IMG/VR virus record: IMGVR_UViG_3300046694_000136
Span: 62,001 to 126,000 of that record
Strand: one strand, 5' to 3'
Length of the DNA stretch: 64,000 bases
Shown here piece after piece: positions 3,496 through 53,405 of this stretch (the stretch's first letter is position 1; every line of letters starts with the position of its first letter). Under the pieces are notes generated by a model. The model searched no databases. It was not told the DNA's origin and worked only from the letters and a program-made list of their open reading frames with translations. The translations under genes were made by a program, and so were the position numbers.

Positions 3496-4203
3496 TTATC
3501 TGAGTTCTTGTGCAATACGGATACCAGTAACCGTCGCTTTCCCTACCGAGTTAACAAGCCCACGGAGATCGTTGAGAAGAGCGCCGGTGAAAACGTCATC
3601 GAGTTCTTCAACAGGGATCACGTTACCGGTAACAATGTTCCGCAAAGCAGTGAGCTTACCGGCCAGGCATTTCGTGATGAGGGAGCAGCGCTGACGATCA
3701 AACGAGGCAACGACCGAAACGCTAAGCAGTGGGTCGTAACCAAGGGCTTTGAATCCGGCGAAGACTTCTTCACCAATGTTCTTCCCGCACCAGGTCTCGG
3801 TATTAAGACCGCTCACCTTGAGCATTCTCATATCCAACAAGACACTGCTGCCTTCTGGCGCCTTGATGAAGGCGGAGGTTGGCATCGCGGTGGTAGCAAC
3901 GTGAGCGTGGTAAATCTTCCCTTCCACCTCAAAGGAAACCATCAGGGCATTTACCCGCATCGCGCTTACGTCGAGCTCGTCCATTACTCCCCACGGACGC
4001 TGGCCAGGAACTTGGCAAAGCGCGAAGTAGTTAGGAATGTCGACAGGTACCGTCAGAAACTGGCTATGGTGACCTTTACGACCGAAAGGATCGCCTTTCG
4101 AGTACTCGACCGCTAACGGCGCAGCCAGAACCGGGGAAACAAAGAACTTTGCAGTGTCGGTATTTTCTTCGTAAACTGGATACGCGCGGGTAATGAATTC
4201 CAT
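3496..4203 (-). CDS. Stand-alone paralog of the central domain of the phiKZ-type major capsid protein
   Basis: Start moved to ATG 4203 (AGGAAAG RBS directly after the upstream stop). Motifs YPVY..KFFVSP, FALCQ, GVMDELD, TTAMPTSAF and VTGIRI resemble the gp120-family middle region as recalled. Confidence 0.55.
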   Translation of the reverse strand: MEFITRAYPVYEENTDTAKFFVSPVLAAPLAVEYSKGDPFGRKGHHSQFLTVPVDIPNYFALCQVPGQRPWGVMDELDVSAMRVNALMVSFEVEGKIYHAHVATTAMPTSAFIKAPEGSSVLLDMRMLKVSGLNTETWCGKNIGEEVFAGFKALGYDPLLSVSVVASFDRQRCSLITKCLAGKLTALRNIVTGNVIPVEELDDVFTGALLNDLRGLVNSVGKATVTGIRIAQELR

Positions 4204-4211
4204 GATCTTTC

Positions 4212-5681
4212 CTATTCGAATAGTTCTTTCGTGATCACACGAATCACCATGTACAGTGACAGAGCAGTCCGTGTGGTTAGGACCCATTGCGGGGTCTTAC
4301 GCCCAGTGATGTCAATTACGATCTTGTCACCCAACTCTCGGATGATTTTAACCTGGTCGTTGTTACTGCGAGAAGCCCCGTACGCACCACGCATCTTAAT
4401 CAATACGTCGTACACGTTACTCCGCTTAATACCATTGGCATGCAAGTATTCAAACATGTGCAAAACAATGGTTTCAGCAAACGTTTTGTAATCGGGGTAC
4501 TTCGGGTTGTTGTACCGCTTAGCAAACTCCTGGATCGAATACTGGAGCATCTCCATACGGACGTTATCCAACACACCCGCAGCGTACTCCATCAGTTCCT
4601 CTTTGAAGAACGAACTCTCTTCAGTAAGGATCCGGTCCAGATAAAGAACATGGGCGGTTACATCTTTCGCCACGCTCTTGATACTTAATTCGTCCTTCAG
4701 TTGAACTTTAGCGGACTCAACTTTTACGATGTTGGTTTTGTTCTTCACATCGTGGAAGACTTTGTTGATGTCGTTAATAGCCCGACGCAACCGGTTCTGG
4801 ATATCACCCACCATGTAGACAATCTTCTTGTCGTTGTCCATCTTGGACCACGCTTCGTAGTGAATTCCCGTCTTAGGGTTGATGATGTACTCAGCACGAG
4901 CCTCGATGAGGGCCTTCCAGCTACCGTAGCGCTTGATGTCGTACTTCAGGCTCAAGCGGTTATAGGTCTCGTATACGACTTCCTTACGAGCTTGGAACGG
5001 ATAGTCATTATGTACGATGCTGGTCAGGCACTTGTAGTGATACATGGAAACCACGTCCACCATAGCCCGGTGTTTCTCATCCGCTTTCAACGTACTCTTG
5101 TTGATACGGAACAAGAGGTAAGGGACGGTCATGTTGAACGCGTCGCCTACGACCGCCCACTCGCTCTTGATCGCGGCGCAAGCGTGCAGGTTTTCCCGCA
5201 GCTCATCTTCATCGCAGTCAAAGATCTCGTTGAACCACTCGTTACGGTCAGCCGTGGTGAAGGTGATCTTCTCCAGACCAAGGTAAGGTGCGCCGAAGAA
5301 CGCCATGTGGTCGTGCATCCCAACTTTACGAGTGATGAAGTTGTAGACGTACTTCTTAAGGGTAAGGGCCCACTTAGAGTTAACCTCCAAGTACTGACCC
5401 ATCTTTTCGAAGACTTGCAGGATGGCGTTGGTGCTTTCGAAGTTTACCCCTTGCAGGAGCGCTTCCATCCCTGCTACATCACTCAGTTCATACTGAGGAG
5501 GTGAAGGCTTGGCGAACTCGTGAGGGTGTCTGTCTTGAAAGAGACCGAGGTATTGATCAGGTACAAAGATCGAGGGTTGCTTGTTCCAGTACTCGTTCTC
5601 AGCTTCCTCAGCCGCTCGATCCGAACTGAGGTCTTCTGGGTTGTACTGAACCGGTACTCGGCTGAAATCTAATTCTGACAT
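4212..5681 (-). CDS. Conserved virion structural protein (phiKZ gp32-like)
   Basis: Start moved to ATG 5681 (TAAGGAGG RBS); acidic N-terminus with a VAGME site; HMAFFG..LG..I.F...DR..WF signature; position near terminase. Confidence 0.6.
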   Translation of the reverse strand: MSELDFSRVPVQYNPEDLSSDRAAEEAENEYWNKQPSIFVPDQYLGLFQDRHPHEFAKPSPPQYELSDVAGMEALLQGVNFESTNAILQVFEKMGQYLEVNSKWALTLKKYVYNFITRKVGMHDHMAFFGAPYLGLEKITFTTADRNEWFNEIFDCDEDELRENLHACAAIKSEWAVVGDAFNMTVPYLLFRINKSTLKADEKHRAMVDVVSMYHYKCLTSIVHNDYPFQARKEVVYETYNRLSLKYDIKRYGSWKALIEARAEYIINPKTGIHYEAWSKMDNDKKIVYMVGDIQNRLRRAINDINKVFHDVKNKTNIVKVESAKVQLKDELSIKSVAKDVTAHVLYLDRILTEESSFFKEELMEYAAGVLDNVRMEMLQYSIQEFAKRYNNPKYPDYKTFAETIVLHMFEYLHANGIKRSNVYDVLIKMRGAYGASRSNNDQVKIIRELGDKIVIDITGRKTPQWVLTTRTALSLYMVIRVITKELFE

Positions 5682-5691
5682 GGGGTCCTCC

Positions 5692-6540
5692 TTATGTTCT
5701 GCGAGCAATGCCCATGCGTTGAGCGTCGTGTACGTTCTGCTTGTCGCTCCAAGTCATGCAAGGAGTCCAAACCTTCAGGAAGTATTCCTTGTAGTTAGTC
5801 CACGCATCCTTGTACTCAGCGATATCGTCTTTGATATCCGAGAGCGCAACACCCATCTTGACAGCGGCTTCGTTAACCGGGCTTTTCAGTTTACGGTACA
5901 AGTACGCTTTAACACCCAGCTCTACCAGCTCAGCGAACTGCAAGTAGTGGTGAGCGTGGATGCTGCTCATCGCTTCGTCGTATTCCATGATGACCTTGGC
6001 ACTCATGTTAAAAGTACCCATGTTGATACCGAAGATCACAAAGACGTTGTTACCCGTCATCTGGCAATCGGTATAGGTCTGCGGCATGGACTTGTTACCG
6101 GCCATGTTGTTAATCATGGAACCCATCATTTCGTTCACAACACCAGAACCACACTCAGCGTCGTTACCCACACCGATGCCCAGCTGACCGATAGCCGAGT
6201 TCATGGAACCGAGGTAGCACTCAGTCACCGAAACAATCTTGGCACCTCGAGTGGTCATCTCAGGAACCTTAACTTCTAGGCAGCCGTTACCGATACTGCG
6301 CATCTCTGAACCACCGAGGTCCAGGTACTCTGTCTTACCACCACCGACCTTACAGTCAGGCAGGATCAACTGGTGGATAATCTTTTCACGGATACCTTGT
6401 TCAATGGTGGTCTCGTTGACCATGTTGTACCAGTTACCGAGTACGTTGGCGTTCTTGTTAGCAAAAGCCAATTCAAAAAGGTACTCACTGATGTCGGAGT
6501 TCAAAACCCGACTGATAGCAAAATCTACTGGGTTACCCAT
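5692..6540 (-). CDS. Conserved phiKZ-like protein, probably virion-associated
   Basis: 282 aa, AAGGA RBS, late-type motif upstream, first gene of the reverse operon. Confidence 0.6.
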   Translation of the reverse strand: MGNPVDFAISRVLNSDISEYLFELAFANKNANVLGNWYNMVNETTIEQGIREKIIHQLILPDCKVGGGKTEYLDLGGSEMRSIGNGCLEVKVPEMTTRGAKIVSVTECYLGSMNSAIGQLGIGVGNDAECGSGVVNEMMGSMINNMAGNKSMPQTYTDCQMTGNNVFVIFGINMGTFNMSAKVIMEYDEAMSSIHAHHYLQFAELVELGVKAYLYRKLKSPVNEAAVKMGVALSDIKDDIAEYKDAWTNYKEYFLKVWTPCMTWSDKQNVHDAQRMGIARRT

Positions 6541-6571
6541 AATCTAATGTCCTTTGATTGGTCAGGCTAAA

Positions 6572-6580
6572 CATAACATT
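6572..6580 (-). promoter_or_regulatory. Candidate late promoter (AATGTTATG)
   Basis: Matches the RATGCTATR motif recurring upstream of virion genes; phiKZ late promoters have TATG at the start site. Confidence 0.45.
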
Positions 6581-6655
6581 TCCTTTGATTGTTTTCTTAG
6601 GAGTATTTCATTGTATGTCTTACCTATACTTTTTGATTTTTGAAGAGTGGGGGTA

Positions 6656-6780
6656 AGAGTAAGACTTATGGAGTGGAGTAGCCCGAAGGGATACGGAACG
6701 GAATAAGGATTACTCTGGGGGAGTTGGTTGGGTTGGTTAGGTTCCGGATCATGCCCTACTGCCCTAAGGCCGCAGGCCTT
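6656..6780 (+). other. Purine-mismatch hairpin, G-rich tract and GCA-triloop hairpin (structured non-coding element)
   Basis: Nested complementarity 6656-6716 with symmetric GA/GA and GGA/GGA mismatches and a C-GAA-G loop; AAGGCC-GCA-GGCCTT at 6766-6780. Confidence 0.6.
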
Positions 6781-6896
6781 TAAAGAAAAGTATTTTATTA
6801 CTGTAATTATTATAAAGCTAATTTAAACAATTTAAATAACTCTATTCCTGTTAAGGGAGTAGGGTAAGGGTCTACTATGCAAAAAGATAATAAACC

Positions 6897-6904
6897 TACA
6901 TTAC
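6897..6904 (+). promoter_or_regulatory. Early (virion RNAP) promoter TACATTAC
   Basis: Variant of the phiKZ early motif TATATTAC, upstream of the 7023 operon. Confidence 0.65.
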
Positions 6905-7022
6905 TAGAGTGAATAAACACTTGATAATCTATTTTAAGCAATCAAGATGACTGGGTAAGGGGTTAGTTGGGATAAATCATCCTTAGTAACCCTTTGAGTC
7001 GATAACTGTAAGGAAGAAGAAA

Positions 7023-7703
7023 ATGACCATTGTTTGTTATGACGGTAAGAAGATGATCGCTGATAGTCTGGCTGCTACAGGGGATATGAAGCTCCCCGGA
7101 GCTTTTCAGAAGATCTATCATCCGCTGGATGATGAGTACTGGGAGATCAACAAAACAAAGGTTATTGCGTTTGGTTTTTCTGGTGCCTTGCCGGCGATTC
7201 CTTATATTCGGGAATTATTGAGTCAAGGGGTTACTTACCGGACGATCATTAAGCCGGATATCGACGTGGTCTTCGAAGCACTGTGCGTACTGGAAACGGG
7301 CGACGCGTACGTACTCAGCACTGAACCAACTCGGGCTAAAGGTCCAAGTGCTCACGAGTTCGTTATGGTTCCGGTACCAGTTCCGGTAGCGGTAGGTAGC
7401 GGTGGTGTGTTTGCCTACGCGGCTATGGGGCCTAAAGATAAGAACCAAGCCGAGAAGGGCGTAGAGGCGGCTAAACGGCTTTGTCCTTTCTGTGGCGGGG
7501 ATAACGTGGTCTGGGAGCTCCCACCTCCTCCAGAAGTCCCGAGCAAGCGTCCAGTATCGGTTCTGCCTGAGCTGGTAAACATTGAAGAGACCTATCCGAT
7601 CAATGGGCTCAACATGGGACAGCTTAAGCACGTGGTTAGTGGGATCGTATCTGATCTGATGAAGAAAGCTGATGAACCAGTGACGGAGGTGAAGAATGGA
7701 TAA
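7023..7703 (+). CDS. Proteasome beta/HslV-like Ntn hydrolase, copy 1
   Basis: M-T1-IVCYDG..ADS, QKI, VGSGG, CPFCGG; Pro-rich linker and C-terminal extension. Confidence 0.75.
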   Translation: MTIVCYDGKKMIADSLAATGDMKLPGAFQKIYHPLDDEYWEINKTKVIAFGFSGALPAIPYIRELLSQGVTYRTIIKPDIDVVFEALCVLETGDAYVLSTEPTRAKGPSAHEFVMVPVPVPVAVGSGGVFAYAAMGPKDKNQAEKGVEAAKRLCPFCGGDNVVWELPPPPEVPSKRPVSVLPELVNIEETYPINGLNMGQLKHVVSGIVSDLMKKADEPVTEVKNG

Positions 7704-7941
7704 TCCGGAAACTATCACGATTACTTTGCCTAAAGGTAAGCTGGATTCCATTGAATCAATTACTACTCGGCCTATCGAGGGATATCCTGGGGTATCTGAA
7801 GTACTGATCAATGGGGAACCCGGTCGTCTGCTGGTCGACCTTTCTCAATTCGAAAACAATGAAAATGATCTGCGACGTCTGTACACCGGTGTCGGGGAAG
7901 GTTTTATCAAGCACCATGTGCGAAAAAATAACAGGAGCTAG
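7696..7941 (+). CDS. Small hypothetical protein within the Ntn cluster
   Basis: 81 aa, GGAGG RBS, overlaps the upstream stop. Confidence 0.7.
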   Translation: MDNPETITITLPKGKLDSIESITTRPIEGYPGVSEVLINGEPGRLLVDLSQFENNENDLRRLYTGVGEGFIKHHVRKNNRS

Positions 7942-7942
7942 T

Positions 7943-8458
7943 ATGACTACTGTAGCTTGGGATGGTAAATTGTTGGTAGCTGACTCACAGTCCACTGTTA
8001 ACGGGCTGGCTACACTTAGTGTCTCTACAAAGATCTTCCTTCCCCCTGAAGGGGTTCTTACTAAATGGACGATCCAAGGAGAGTCGGTCGCGGCAATTGG
8101 TCTAGCGGGTTGTGCCATGGCACAATATACCTTTACGGACATGCTTGCGGAGGGGCTTACCCACCGTAGTCCAGTCCCTAAAGAATCCAGCTCCTTTGCC
8201 GCGTTGGTCATTACCCATACCGGTAAATGCTTCCGGTTTAACTATCGGAAGAAAGATGGCGAGGGTCCAAGCGTCCAATTGAGTTTTTCAAACGGCAAGG
8301 ACGCAATCGGTAGTGGGGGTAGTTTTGCCAATGCTGTGATGAGTATCAATATCGACGCTGGTTTGGCAGTACAGGCGGCTATCAATGTTGATCCTAGCAG
8401 CGGTGGTTCGCTTCAAATCTGGAACTCTGCTGAGCCAGGTGTTATTTCCATTCGTTGA
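7943..8458 (+). CDS. Proteasome beta/HslV-like Ntn hydrolase, copy 2
   Basis: Probable start ATG 7943 (AGGAG RBS): MTTVAWDG..ADS, TKI, IGSGG, DPSSGG. Confidence 0.8.
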   Translation: MTTVAWDGKLLVADSQSTVNGLATLSVSTKIFLPPEGVLTKWTIQGESVAAIGLAGCAMAQYTFTDMLAEGLTHRSPVPKESSSFAALVITHTGKCFRFNYRKKDGEGPSVQLSFSNGKDAIGSGGSFANAVMSINIDAGLAVQAAINVDPSSGGSLQIWNSAEPGVISIR

Positions 8459-8472
8459 GGTTAAGGGTAATT

Positions 8473-9066
8473 ATGACAACAGTAGCGTGGGACGGTAATA
8501 CCTTAGCAGCAGATACTCTTTACGTGGCCGGTACTCGTAAGCTGGGAGGGGATTATGAAAAGATCCTGCTTCCGGAAGATACTCCATGGACAGTTAACGG
8601 TAAACCCATTCTGGCAGTTGGCTTCAGTGGGTCGATTGCGACTATCCCATGCATCAAGAAAGTTCTGGAAGCTGACGCAGTACCCGGGGTTGATCCAGCA
8701 TGTGGAGATTACAGCTTCACGATCTTGTTGGTAACCGATAAGAAAGAAGTTTACTACTGGAACTACGGCTCCACTGCTAAAGGCGAAGTGATTAACGAGC
8801 TCTTCGCTGTGGAAGGTAATCACGCTATTGGTAGCGGCGGGATTTACGGTCTAGGGGTCATGGCCATTAAAGGCGATGCAATCAACGCAGTGAAAGCCGG
8901 TATCAAAATCGATGTCAACAGCGGCGGTTACATTGACGTGTGGTCTTTCGAGACTCCTCGTCTGCTGACACGGATTAACCCCAAGGGCGGTGAAATCATC
9001 TCTGCCAAACAAAACACACCTGCTCCCGAAAAGAGCAAAGCTATCTTATGCGCCGTGAACGGCTGA
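8473..9066 (+). CDS. Proteasome beta/HslV-like Ntn hydrolase, copy 3
   Basis: Probable start ATG 8473: MTTVAWDG..AADT, EKI, IGSGG, DVNSGG. Confidence 0.8.
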   Translation: MTTVAWDGNTLAADTLYVAGTRKLGGDYEKILLPEDTPWTVNGKPILAVGFSGSIATIPCIKKVLEADAVPGVDPACGDYSFTILLVTDKKEVYYWNYGSTAKGEVINELFAVEGNHAIGSGGIYGLGVMAIKGDAINAVKAGIKIDVNSGGYIDVWSFETPRLLTRINPKGGEIISAKQNTPAPEKSKAILCAVNG

Positions 9067-9503: not shown

Positions 9504-10469
9504 ATGTCTGATTCTACCGATCTGAAAATCTGGGCTTGCGGTGGTACTGGTATCAACGTTTCGGCCGAAGCCAAAGCCAAGCCTCTGACTCAAGCAATCA
9601 AAGATGCACACGTGATCGGCCTGGACAGCTCTGACGCCAACGACAGCTCTGACCTGTTCGAAATCCACCGCATCGCAGGTCTGCAAGGCGCCGGCAAAGA
9701 CGCCAACAAAATCATGGACAAAGTCCGTCCGTTCGTGAAGGCTCTCGTTGCCAGCGAAAAACCTGGTAACCACAACATCGTCGTCGTGAACATCTCCGGT
9801 GGTACCGGTCGTGGTATGGCGTTCCAACTGGTGCGCGAACTGATCGAGAAAGAAGCGATCGTTATCCTGGCAATGATCTCGGACTTCACCTCGGTCACCG
9901 AGAAAGAAAACTCGGTCAAACAGCGCACTGCTCTGGTGAACATGATCAACCAGCTCGGCAAGCCGATCTGCTTCATGGAGTTCACCGAAGACGCTGACAA
10001 AACTCGCGGTGAAGTGAACGCGGAAGTTATCCAAGGCATTGCTCTGGCCTCGGTGTTCCTGAGCAAGTACAAGTCGGAAATGGAAGTCTCCGACCTGACC
10101 AACCTGTTCAACTACTCCTACGACAACAAGGTTCCGCCGGCGCTGAGTCGTATCCAGTTCTACGACGAAGTCACTTCCAAGGAATACAACGGCCCGACTC
10201 CTGTAGCGGTTGGTAGTTTGTTCATCGACAACGCTTCGGTTCGCCAAGTGTTCCCTGGAACGGTTTACCGTAGTACCGGTATTCTGAACAAGAAGAACAA
10301 CCCGCCTGGCGATCTGAAAGAACTGCACCTGACTCTCGACCACGGTGAAGCGTACGCTGCACTGCAAGAAGAGATCAAGGCGCTGGCCGACGACAAAGCC
10401 CAACTGGCTGCCCGCTTCGTGTCCCAGAAAGACATGAGTGCCGGTGCTGCTGATGACGGCTTCTGCTAA
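9504..10469 (+). CDS. phuZ: Phage tubulin PhuZ
   Basis: ACGGTGIN, GAGKD, tubulin-like SGGTGRG, acidic C-terminal tail ADDGFC; 321 aa. Confidence 0.92.
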   Translation: MSDSTDLKIWACGGTGINVSAEAKAKPLTQAIKDAHVIGLDSSDANDSSDLFEIHRIAGLQGAGKDANKIMDKVRPFVKALVASEKPGNHNIVVVNISGGTGRGMAFQLVRELIEKEAIVILAMISDFTSVTEKENSVKQRTALVNMINQLGKPICFMEFTEDADKTRGEVNAEVIQGIALASVFLSKYKSEMEVSDLTNLFNYSYDNKVPPALSRIQFYDEVTSKEYNGPTPVAVGSLFIDNASVRQVFPGTVYRSTGILNKKNNPPGDLKELHLTLDHGEAYAALQEEIKALADDKAQLAARFVSQKDMSAGAADDGFC

Positions 10470-10486: not shown

Positions 10487-10522
10487 CCTTAGTTAGGAGC
10501 GCGCGCTCCTAACTAAGGGTTT
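10487..10522 (+). terminator. Intrinsic terminator
   Basis: Perfect palindrome CCTTAGTTAGGAGCGCGCGCTCCTAACTAAGG followed by GTTT. Confidence 0.85.
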
Positions 10523-30984: not shown

Positions 30985-31027
30985 AATAATAACCAGCAGG
31001 GTCACCCCCTGCTGGTTATTATTTTTT
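30985..31027. terminator. Bidirectional terminator
   Basis: AATAATAACCAGCAGGG..CCCTGCTGGTTATTATT. Confidence 0.85.
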
Positions 31028-53368: not shown

Positions 53369-53405
53369 GCTACCCTACCCAGCCCGTAAGGCTGGGTAGG
53401 GTAGT
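53369..53405. terminator. Bidirectional terminator
   Basis: CTACCCTACCCAGCC-CGTAA-GGCTGGGTAGGGTAG. Confidence 0.85.

What the first reader, a model, noticed from the sequence alone, without database searches (positions are those of the whole stretch)
6656..6780. Strand-specific DNA hairpin built from GGA zippers and GNA triloops
Seen, outside in: AGAGTAA/TTACTCT, GA:GA, CTTAT/ATAAG, GGA:GGA, GT/AC, GGA:GGA, GTA/TAC, G:A, CCC-GAA-GGG; a second hairpin AAGGCC-GCA-GGCCTT follows. Every mismatch is purine:purine and symmetric. Known: sheared GA tandems, (GGA)2 zippers and C-GNA-G triloops are unusually stable in ssDNA, and N4 virion RNAP promoters use such triloops. Inference: a signal that folds on the top strand only (origin, primase, packaging or vRNAP loading site) at the early/late divergence point.
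Basis: partly seen in the sequence, partly recalled or inferred. Interest (0 to 1): 0.7.

Follow-up and report, generated by a model that had tools for sequence, protein, structure and literature searches.

The report
Purine-zippered hairpin in a jumbo-phage RNA
A 61-base hairpin whose nine mismatches are all purine-purine is real, single-copy and the best-conserved part of an intergenic region in phage-EL-like jumbo phages, and it most likely folds in a small late RNA rather than in single-stranded DNA.

Summary
H1 (6656-6716) has 20 Watson-Crick tiers and 9 G.A/A.G/G.G tiers, with no other mismatch. It is the top hairpin of the 234.5 kb genome.

The genome is a phiKZ-like, nucleus-forming jumbo phage (PhuZ, multisubunit RNAP); its closest cultured relative is Pseudomonas phage EL.

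H1 occurs once per genome, always between the DUF7484 late gene and the HslV-like/PhuZ early operon. I found it in five further metagenomic relatives and in EL.

EL keeps the same arm length with about half the bases changed: 8 compensatory pairs and again only purine-purine mismatches. The purine strand is the more stable one in all three lineages tested.

Evidence favours RNA. A phiKZ-type late promoter motif (ATTGTATG, +1 = G6617) sits 30-33 nt upstream in every carrier. A G.U-rich 5' stem (H0) starts at +2. A covarying GNA-capped hairpin (H2) follows.

The N4-like vRNAP reading fails: H1's triloop is not conserved, H1 is not repeated, and the genome's early promoters are a linear motif. 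No expression data could be obtained, so the transcript and its function are inferred.

The parts
5692..6540 (-). DUF7484 gene (late, virion-type), the left neighbour
   Evidence: Pfam PF24302 E 3.5e-73 and phrog_3179. Homologues are annotated as virion structural proteins in some phages.
6572..6579 (-). Late-promoter motif ATGTTATG for the DUF7484 operon; predicted +1 at 6572
   Evidence: Matches AT[TG]NTATG. CATA[AG]CAT is kept upstream of DUF7484 in nearly all of the roughly 30 relatives. TATG with G as +1 is the phiKZ late promoter (PMC4666361).
6610..6617 (+). Late-promoter motif ATTGTATG pointing into H0/H1; predicted +1 = G6617
   Evidence: One of 19 AT[TG]NTATG sites in the genome. Eleven of them lie 32-82 nt upstream of the next same-strand ORF, against about 0.5 expected. 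The motif is kept as ATTGTATG, ATCGTATG or ATTATATG, 30-33 nt before the G5 run, in every H1 carrier.
6618..6658 (+). H0: 5'-terminal stem-loop (UCUUACC / GGUAAGA plus an inner stem); its 3' strand is the upstream G5-TAAG block
   Evidence: RNAalifold consensus, fold of 6617-6716 and inverted repeat I1. The inner stem changes compensatorily (window UGA/UUG, L002/L049 UAG/CUA). L018 pairs a different pyrimidine tract with the same G5-TAAG block.
6656..6716 (+). H1: 29-tier hairpin with 20 Watson-Crick tiers, 9 purine:purine tiers and a 3-nt loop
   Evidence: It is the conservation peak of the intergenic region: 0.89-0.99 identity against 0.2-0.84 in the other bins.
6717..6723 (+). Downstream G5 block (GGGGGAG or GGGGGTG) directly after H1
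   Evidence: Conserved in all carriers, including EL. It also follows a short GAAA-loop hairpin in relatives that lack H1.
6724..6765 (+). Variable spacer
   Evidence: Identity falls to 0.39-0.64; its length and sequence differ among relatives.
6766..6780 (+). H2: 6-bp GC-rich hairpin with a C-GNA-G triloop
   Evidence: Stem covaries (AU<->GC in 3 sequences, GC<->CG in 1) while the loop stays G-N-A (GCA, GAA, GTA). In my own reading of the EL sequence, CTACC-GAA-GGTAG sits at the matching place. H2 is the only intergenic C-GNA-G hairpin with a stem of 5 bp or more in the genome. It is not followed by a T run.
6781..6840 (.). AT-rich tract containing a TATTAC..GTAAT palindrome
   Evidence: A similar palindrome is present in EL. 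One sigma-70-like match on the - strand is no more than chance.
6842..6862 (+). H3: small hairpin CTATTCC / GGAGTAG
   Evidence: Compensatory change between window and L002 (T:A to C:G), read from the alignment.
6892..6919 (+). Early-promoter motif for the HslV-like/PhuZ operon
   Evidence: 30 nt identical in L002. The same motif occurs elsewhere in the genome. The k-mers CCTATAT and ATATTAC are enriched upstream of genes. It resembles the AT-rich early promoters of phiKZ-like phages (PMC10914365).
7023..7703 (+). First of three HslV-like peptidase paralogues; PhuZ follows at 9504-10469
   Evidence: phrog_1040 and phrog_4733.

Best explanation
H1 is the core of a structured RNA made from the top strand.

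Proposed mechanism:
1. A phiKZ-type late promoter (ATTGTATG, +1 = G6617), read by the phage's own non-virion multisubunit RNA polymerase, starts a rightward transcript.
2. Its first 100 nt fold into two adjacent hairpins. H0 (6618-6658) begins at +2. H1 (6656-6716) is a 29-tier rod in which 2-7 bp Watson-Crick blocks alternate with tandem G.A or G.G.A purine tiers.
3. After a variable spacer, the small GNA-capped hairpin H2 (6766-6780) ends or punctuates the unit.
4. The product is either a free RNA of about 165 nt (about 200 nt in phage EL) or the leader of a late read-through transcript into the HslV-like/PhuZ operon.

I think the purine tiers do three things. They keep a long helix stacked and stable only on this strand. 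They prevent it from being a perfect duplex. They give a sequence-specific surface for a still unidentified protein partner.

Shown: the fold, its strand specificity, its conservation and covariation, the promoter motif and its enrichment, single copy, and fixed synteny.
Inferred: that the transcript exists, where it ends, and what binds it.
For: 1. Structure under selection. Six window-clade sequences and EL align without gaps over the hairpin. Eight pairs change on both sides (0 of 500 shuffles reach this), and 70.7% of cells pair against 29-43% when partners are slid. All 59 other cells are G.A, A.G or G.G.

2. Strand. The purine strand is much more stable as RNA in three lineages: window -21.3 vs -14.5, L019 -21.7 vs -14.9, EL -24.8 vs -11.2 kcal/mol.

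3. Promoter. AT[TG]NTATG occurs 19 times in 234.5 kb, and 11 sites lie 32-82 nt upstream of a same-strand ORF. TATG with G as +1 is the nvRNAP late promoter of phiKZ (PMC4666361). The phage has beta- and beta'-like RNAP genes. The motif is kept 30-33 nt before the G5 block in every carrier. This site is the outlier of its class: the next ORF is 406 nt away and has its own early promoter.

4. The 5' stem H0 starts at the predicted +2, covaries, and is rich in G.U pairs. L018 uses 4 G.U pairs in a 13-bp version (my own pairing of the L018 sequence). Relatives lacking H1 carry a GAAA-tetraloop hairpin in its place. Both are habits of RNA rather than DNA.

5. H1 is the conservation peak, above the neighbouring coding DNA.

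6. The tiny ORF inside H1 is broken (ATG TAG) wherever position 6671 is T, which is the case in 4 of the 6 complete window-clade sequences.

7. No late-promoter motif on the bottom strand lies to the right of H1 (my own reading), so the complement is not expected in late RNA.

8. Precedent: phiKZ and 201phi2-1 make many short promoter-proximal RNAs under 250 nt (PMC10914365 and PMC11512511).
Against: - No expression data. The only runs that could be laid were DNA-like: uniform depth and Nextera adaptors.
- There is no Rfam match.
- H2 has no U tract and is not like the genome's usual long perfect terminator hairpins, so the 3' end is uncertain.
- C-GNA-G triloops (H2, three of seven H1 loops, and several in the EL unit) are best known as DNA mini-hairpins.
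- Covariation for H1 rests on essentially two lineages, the window clade and EL.
- No phage-encoded L7Ae, RNase III or CsrA was found as a partner.
Confidence: 0.6

Rival explanations
1. H1, with or without H2, folds in single-stranded top-strand DNA and acts as a cis signal: an origin, a primase or helicase loading site, a packaging start, or a polymerase loading site. The adjacent 60-nt AT-rich tract would help unwinding. In one variant, the late or middle promoter makes a G-rich RNA that stays as an R-loop and primes replication, as at T4 oriF/oriG or the T7 primary origin.
For: - Sheared tandem G.A, the (GGA)2 motif and C-GNA-G triloops are well documented as very stable in DNA (PMC11014236, PMC13037366).
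- Sheared purine pairs occur in the ssDNA replication hairpins of Streptomyces telomeres (PMC5449611).
- The element is single-copy per genome, as expected for an origin or pac site.
- H2 is the only intergenic C-GNA-G hairpin in the genome, and its loop is conserved while its stem covaries.
- An AT-rich tract lies next to it.
- The purine strand is also the more stable one with DNA parameters.
Against: - There is no GC-skew inflection at this position and there are no iterons.
- The locus is one of more than 40 strand switches in the crude ORF map.
- The triloop of H1 itself is not GNA in most relatives.
- H0 relies on several G.T pairs, which are poor in DNA.
- Predicted DNA stability is modest: -7 to -8.5 kcal/mol for 61-63 nt.
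- The element is absent from phiKZ, RisingSun and closer relatives that share the same replication genes and synteny, which is odd for an essential origin.
- The fixed-distance late-promoter motif has no role in a pure ssDNA model.
Confidence: 0.15
2. The sequence works as double-stranded DNA: an operator-like array of GGA/GA half-sites bound by a phage regulator that controls the back-to-back late promoters or the early-to-late switch. The hairpin potential would be a by-product.
For: - It sits 40-100 bp from two divergent late-type start sites.
- Primary sequence conservation is very high within the window clade.
- GGA recurs at 5-nt spacing on one strand.
Against: - EL keeps the pairing geometry and arm length while changing about half the bases, with 8 compensatory pairs. 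That is a signature of a folded single strand, not of a duplex binding site.
- A dimer-binding palindrome would place the mismatch motifs on opposite strands. Here all are purines on one strand.
Confidence: 0.07
3. A decaying palindrome or a former terminator with no present function.
For: The genome is rich in long perfect palindromic hairpins, so such sequences arise easily.
Against: - It is the most conserved segment of the region.
- Mismatches are exclusively purine:purine in two diverged lineages.
- The total of canonical tiers (Watson-Crick plus G.U) stays at 20-21 even where individual tiers change.
Confidence: 0.03

Closest known systems
Promoter-proximal short RNAs of phiKZ-like phages (phiKZ 5'UTR-derived RNAs of about 71-196 nt; 201phi2-1 sRNA005, conserved upstream of the gp182-type tail gene, including in EL)
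   Same: The phage group and polymerase system are the same. A phage promoter is followed within 250 nt or less by hairpins, and the unit is intergenic or in a leader. Conservation by genomic position among giant phages has been reported for one such RNA (PMC10914365, PMC11512511).
   Different: The locus differs: DUF7484/HslV-PhuZ, not the tail gene. There is no sequence or model match in phiKZ. The long purine-zippered rod is not described for those RNAs. Expression here is untested.
N4 virion-RNAP hairpin promoters
   Same: Both are strand-specific hairpins with a 3-nt loop in a phage that carries its polymerase in the virion.
   Different: By my own knowledge and PMC4496689, N4 promoters have 5-7 bp stems, a conserved purine-centred loop, several copies at early genes, and a single-subunit vRNAP. 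Here there are 29 tiers, a variable loop, one copy, multisubunit RNAP genes, and a separate linear early-promoter motif.
Sheared tandem G.A, the (GGA)2 motif and C-GNA-G mini-hairpins (human satellite III TGGAA repeats; GCGNAGC DNA mini-hairpins)
   Same: The local sequence rules are the same: 5'-GA-3' opposite 5'-GA-3', and GGA opposite GGA flanked by Watson-Crick pairs. The 3' arm even reads CGGAA CGGAA. H2 has a C-GNA-G loop.
   Different: Those are studied as DNA oligomers or repeats. Here the motifs are embedded in a unique, conserved 61-nt hairpin that is probably RNA. Tandem G.A is also the most stable tandem mismatch in RNA (my own knowledge).
ssDNA replication hairpins with purine:purine pairs (Streptomyces telomere palindromes, parvovirus termini, G4-type ssi sites)
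   Same: Folded single strands with sheared purine pairs and GNA-type loops that are read by replication proteins.
   Different: Those lie at genome ends or in ssDNA replicons. This one is internal in a 234 kb dsDNA phage and carries no other origin marks.
HIV-1 RRE stem IIB / Rev, and lambda nut boxB / HK022 put RNAs (my own knowledge)
   Same: Purine:purine pairs (G.A, G.G) inside a helix can form a protein-binding groove. Small GC hairpins with G-purine-A loops just downstream of a promoter can modify the transcribing polymerase.
   Different: No homology and no partner protein identified. This is an analogy of possible mechanism only.

Membership tests
N4-type vRNAP hairpin promoter | Short stem (5-7 bp) with a conserved 3-nt loop, purine at its centre | tested here: not met
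   H1 has 29 tiers. Its loop is GAA, TAC, TTC or TCC among relatives.
N4-type vRNAP hairpin promoter | Several copies in front of early genes | tested here: not met
   One copy per genome in four complete genomes. Early genes carry a linear CTA[CT]ATTAC motif instead.
N4-type vRNAP hairpin promoter | Phage encodes a single-subunit N4/T7-like virion RNAP | tested here: inconclusive
   PF00940 gave no hit, but its control rang nowhere. Multisubunit beta'-like (over cut-off) and beta-like (weak) genes are present, as in phiKZ and EL.
phiKZ-type late (nvRNAP) promoter | TATG with G as +1, immediately upstream of late transcripts | tested here: met
   ATTGTATG lies at 6610-6617. The extended motif AT[TG]NTATG has 19 sites, 11 of them 32-82 nt upstream of same-strand ORFs. 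The rule comes from PMC4666361. Only the motif was tested, not activity.
phiKZ-type late (nvRNAP) promoter | Transcription actually starts there late in infection | not testable with these tools
   The runs that could be laid were DNA-like.
Promoter-proximal small RNA of giant phages | Start site followed within 250 nt or less by a terminator, giving an abundant short transcript | tested here: inconclusive
   The promoter motif and downstream hairpins H1 and H2 are present. H2 lacks a U tract and differs from the genome's usual terminator hairpins. Transcript abundance is unknown.
Intrinsic terminator | GC-rich hairpin followed by a U/T run | tested here: not met
   No terminator-like site on either strand of 6400-7100. 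H1 is followed by a G5 block, H2 by TTTAAAG or TATAA.
Sheared tandem G.A / (GGA)2 motif | 5'-GA-3' opposite 5'-GA-3' (or GGA opposite GGA) bracketed by Watson-Crick pairs | tested here: met
   all tandem mismatches have this polarity, in the window clade and in EL.
Sheared tandem G.A / (GGA)2 motif | Sheared pairing geometry with cross-strand purine stacking | not testable with these tools
   Needs NMR, a crystal structure or chemical probing.
C-GNA-G triloop mini-hairpin | G-N-A loop closed by C:G, conserved | tested here: met
   This applies to H2 only: GCA, GAA or GTA with covarying stems. For H1 it is not met.
Replication origin | Skew switch, iterons or initiator boxes, an unwinding element | tested here: inconclusive
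   No skew switch and no iterons, but an AT-rich tract is present. Phage origins often lack these marks.
Any Rfam family | Covariance-model match | tested here: not met
   Only a chance hit, E 2.8 and 17 bits against a cut-off of 114.

The most novel reading that the evidence does not exclude
H0-H1-H2 plus the neighbouring AT-rich tract is the cis-acting start signal for replication or packaging of EL-like nucleus-forming phages. It would act either as an extruded top-strand DNA hairpin or as a promoter-launched G-rich RNA that persists as an R-loop primer. That would be the first mapped origin-type element in this phage family, and one defined by purine-zipper geometry.
Probability: 0.12. Interest if true: 0.8.

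Novelty: new variant of a known kind. Interest (0 to 1): 0.5.

Why it matters
Nucleus-forming jumbo phages transcribe with their own polymerases, and little is known about their non-coding RNAs or cis signals. This element has four useful properties:
- It is small and single-copy.
- It is more conserved than the genes around it.
- It has no family in Rfam.
- It is present in a cultivable, genetically tractable phage (EL on P. aeruginosa).

That makes it directly testable. Its architecture is a long helix held together by regularly spaced G.A and G.G.A tiers, with the count of canonical tiers (Watson-Crick plus G.U) held at 20-21. That is an unusual natural example of a motif known mostly from oligonucleotide studies. 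It should define a specific protein-nucleic-acid interaction: a late regulator, an antitermination or processing factor, or a replication factor.

Tried and rejected
- blastn of 6000-7600 against cultured phages found no match. Relatives were reached through the DUF7484 protein instead.
- Rfam: nothing.
- Pattern scans for more distant carriers gave only known carriers plus chance hits: L009, L010, L012-14, L048, L052, L054 and L062.
- The covariance model R1 found no copy in phiKZ, RisingSun or three closer metagenomic genomes, and no second copy in four carrier genomes.
- Read laying: runs X3-X6 hold a near-identical phage at low DNA-like depth. Runs X26-X31 hold an EL-like variant at uniform depth with Nextera adaptors. 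Neither says anything about transcription.
- In that EL variant no listed difference falls in L017:2185-2402, and one contig covering 2308-2393 has none. Five weaker differences were hidden by the tool, so I make no strong claim from this.
- A coding reading was rejected. The 12-codon ORF in H1 is stopped at codon 2 in four relatives, the EL ORF is unrelated, and the 30-37-codon frames after H1 are not conserved.
- A CsrA/RsmA-sponge reading was considered because there are 7 GGA in about 170 nt. It was set aside because the conserved unit is GA rather than GGA in EL, and the motifs are buried in the helix.
- A MITE or insertion reading was rejected: the element is single-copy with fixed synteny.
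- A phage-encoded L7Ae, RNase III or CsrA partner was not found.
- A sigma-70 promoter on the - strand at 6836-6809 is no more than chance.
- The PF00940 test was uninformative because its control was silent.

Full report
**What the window is**

The window is bases 62001-126000 of a 234,503-bp virus record with terminal repeats.
- Around the finding lie a leftward DUF7484 gene (5692-6540) and a rightward block of three HslV-like peptidase genes (7023-9066), followed by the tubulin PhuZ (9504-10469).
- A phiKZ-capsid-like ORF and beta-/beta'-like RNA polymerase genes are also present.
- This is therefore a phiKZ-like, nucleus-forming jumbo phage.
- Its closest cultured relative is Pseudomonas phage EL, with 64% amino-acid identity on DUF7484. 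EL has the same gene order: gp014 divergent from gp015 (HslV family) and gp016 (PhuZ).

**The observation**

- H1 (6656-6716) has 29 tiers around a 3-nt loop: 20 Watson-Crick, 4 G.A, 3 A.G and 2 G.G, with nothing else.
- ViennaRNA returns exactly that drawing for the top strand. Z-scores are -4.1 (DNA) and -5.3 (RNA), and no shuffle folds as well.
- In a genome-wide scan that lets purine:purine tiers pass free, H1 ranks first with score 20. Twenty shuffled genomes gave maxima of 12-18.8.
- The other long hairpins of the genome are perfect 14-17-bp palindromes of a different kind.
- H2 (6766-6780) is present as described.

**Conservation**

DUF7484-guided and pattern searches recovered H1 in five further metagenomic phages (L002, L019, L049, L051, L053), in a truncated contig (L018), and in EL.
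- Within the window clade the stems are almost invariant while the flanks diverge. In 20-nt bins, identity to the window is 0.89-0.99 across H1, 0.39-0.64 just after it, 0.2-0.4 in the early leader, and 0.66-0.79 in the neighbouring coding DNA.
- The few changes are telling. G6663 to T turns a G.A tier into T:A. G6671 to T turns the middle G.G into a wobble. In L019 the single G.A next to the loop shifts by one tier.
- EL has arms of identical length (27 nt from TAAG to the loop) with about half the bases different. It has 18 Watson-Crick tiers, 2 G.U tiers, and 9 tiers that are again only G.A, A.G or G.G.
- On the gap-free alignment, 8 pairs change on both sides and 70.7% of cells pair, against 29-43% when partners are slid. 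No shuffle matches this.
- Across 7 sequences, all 59 non-canonical cells are purine:purine.
- The covariance model finds one copy per genome in four complete genomes, always at this locus. It finds none in phiKZ, RisingSun or three closer relatives.
- In phiKZ the DUF7484 homologue is PHIKZ042, and its 578-nt upstream region has no such hairpin.
- In three relatives at 58% identity, the same place holds a short hairpin with a GAAA tetraloop followed by the same GGGGGAG block.

**Which strand, and DNA or RNA**

The purine strand is the stable one in three lineages.

| Lineage | RNA, purine strand vs complement (kcal/mol) | DNA, purine strand vs complement (kcal/mol) |
|---|---|---|
| Window | -21.3 vs -14.5 | -8.4 vs -5.4 |
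| L019 | -21.7 vs -14.9 | -8.5 vs -6.9 |
| EL | -24.8 vs -11.2 | -7.2 vs -5.6 |

Four observations point to RNA.

1. There is a promoter motif upstream.
   - ATTGTATG lies at 6610-6617. The motif AT[TG]NTATG occurs only 19 times in the genome.
   - Eleven of the 19 sites lie 32-82 nt upstream of the next ORF on the same strand, where about 0.5 would be expected.
   - TATG with G as +1 is the experimentally defined late promoter of the phiKZ non-virion polymerase (PMC4666361).
   - The motif is kept 30-33 nt before the G5 block in every H1 carrier, including EL.
   - This site is the odd one out in its class. The next ORF is 406 nt away and has its own early promoter (6892-6919), so the transcript is a non-coding RNA or a long structured leader.
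2. The consensus RNA fold puts a 5' stem-loop, H0, from +2 (6618) to 6658. Its 3' strand is the conserved G5-TAAG block. Its inner stem changes compensatorily. In L018 a different pyrimidine tract pairs with the same block through four G.U pairs. Many G.U pairs and a stem beginning at the start site fit an RNA better than DNA.
3. The relatives without H1 use a GNRA tetraloop hairpin at the same place.
4. No late-promoter motif on the bottom strand lies to the right of H1, and the bottom-strand late start (6572) lies to its left. The pyrimidine version should therefore not be made late.

Against the RNA reading:
- I have no expression data. The runs that could be laid were DNA-like.
- H2 lacks a U tract.
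- C-GNA-G loops are best known from DNA.

**The rest of the unit**

- H2 covaries in its stem (AU<->GC three times, GC<->CG once) while its loop stays G-N-A.
- EL has CTACC-GAA-GGTAG at the matching place, plus further C-GNA-G hairpins before an AT-rich tract.
- H2 is the only intergenic C-GNA-G hairpin with a stem of 5 bp or more in the genome.
- The spacer between H1 and H2 is free to vary.
- All ten cultured EL-like phages carry the 230-nt EL unit at 99.6-100% identity. None annotates it as RNA, and some place spurious small ORFs on it.

- The N4 comparison fails on stem length, loop conservation, copy number and promoter type. The polymerase evidence also points away from it: multisubunit RNAP genes are present, but the search for a single-subunit enzyme was uninformative (see the membership test).
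- Cumulative GC skew shows no turn at 68.6 kb, and the crude ORF map has more than 40 strand switches, so this divergence point is not special.
- There are no iterons.
- An essential origin would not be expected to be missing from close relatives with the same synteny.
- Even so, single copy, the adjacent AT-rich tract and the DNA-like triloops keep a DNA-level or R-loop role alive at roughly one chance in seven.

**Most likely working**

1. The late polymerase starts at G6617.
2. H0 and H1 fold side by side as the RNA emerges.
3. H2 ends or punctuates the unit.
4. The RNA then acts either as a free small RNA or as the leader that decides whether late transcription continues into the HslV-like/PhuZ operon.

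The purine tiers are regularly spaced, limited to G.A and G.G, and constant in number (8-9) even where individual tiers change. They look like a recognition surface for a protein. They would also keep a 29-tier helix from being a perfect duplex. These last steps are inference.

**Novelty**

Short promoter-proximal RNAs are known in phiKZ and 201phi2-1 (PMC10914365, PMC11512511). This locus, this fold and this purine-zipper design are not in Rfam, not annotated in any EL-like record, and not found in those two papers' descriptions as far as I could read them. I rate it a new variant of a known kind, with moderate interest, and directly testable in phage EL.

Noticed in passing
window 10487-10518, 30985-31023, 53370-53404 (genome 72487-72518, 92985-93023, 115370-115404), and at least 9 more sites in the genome outside the window: A family of perfect 14-17-bp GC-rich palindromic hairpins, many of the form TACCCTACC(C)AGCC-loop-GGCTGGGTAGGGTA, lies between genes and reads the same on both strands. 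They are probably this phage's bidirectional terminators, like the conserved terminator motif reported for phiKZ.
   Followed up: partly
whole genome; in the window e.g. predicted starts at 6572(-), 6617(+), 44624(+), 49260(+), 63746(+): AT[TG]NTATG is a sharply defined promoter-type motif: 19 sites, mostly 32-82 nt upstream of ORFs. At genome 60750 it is followed at once by a terminator-like hairpin, which may be another promoter-proximal short RNA.
   Followed up: partly
window 6892-6919; genome 5440-5470 and other sites: An early-promoter-type motif (AAC)CTA[CT]ATTAC[CT]AG.GTGAATAAACA recurs upstream of rightward early genes. Its k-mers are 6-7 fold enriched in upstream regions.
   Followed up: partly
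window 7023-9066: Three tandem HslV-like peptidase paralogues precede PhuZ, whereas EL is annotated with one.
   Followed up: no
window 3496-4287 (-): A 263-aa ORF matches only the middle of the phiKZ major capsid protein profile (positions 145-326 of 635). It could be a capsid-fold paralogue or a fragment.
   Followed up: no
L020-L022, first 150 nt upstream of DUF7484: Relatives at 58% identity have TTGTATAC instead of TTGTATG. In place of H1 they have an 8-bp hairpin with a GAAA tetraloop running into the same GGGGGAG block. This suggests H1 is an elaboration of an older, smaller stem-loop.
   Followed up: partly
window 6617-6623 versus 6653-6658 and 6659-6665: The leader GUCUUAC is complementary to both copies of a tandem GTAAGA repeat. 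Pairing with the second copy would open the base of H1, so a conformational switch is possible. The repeat is absent from EL (pairs I1 and I5).
   Followed up: no
window 6754-6767 and 6851-6864: A 14-nt, 86% complementary pair brackets H2 and the AT-rich tract. It is only weakly kept in relatives (pair I2).
   Followed up: partly
L017:2182-2184 (EL unit, loop of the CCCC-GGA-GGGG hairpin): An EL-like variant in runs X26-X31 has the three loop bases replaced by their reverse complement (a loop flip), while the stem is unchanged.
   Followed up: no
runs X3-X6 (one sample, 'organism A'): A phage differing from the window by 5 substitutions in 1.8 kb is present at low depth in a sample filed under a single organism's name, which may hint at the host or habitat. 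None of the substitutions is in H1.
   Followed up: no
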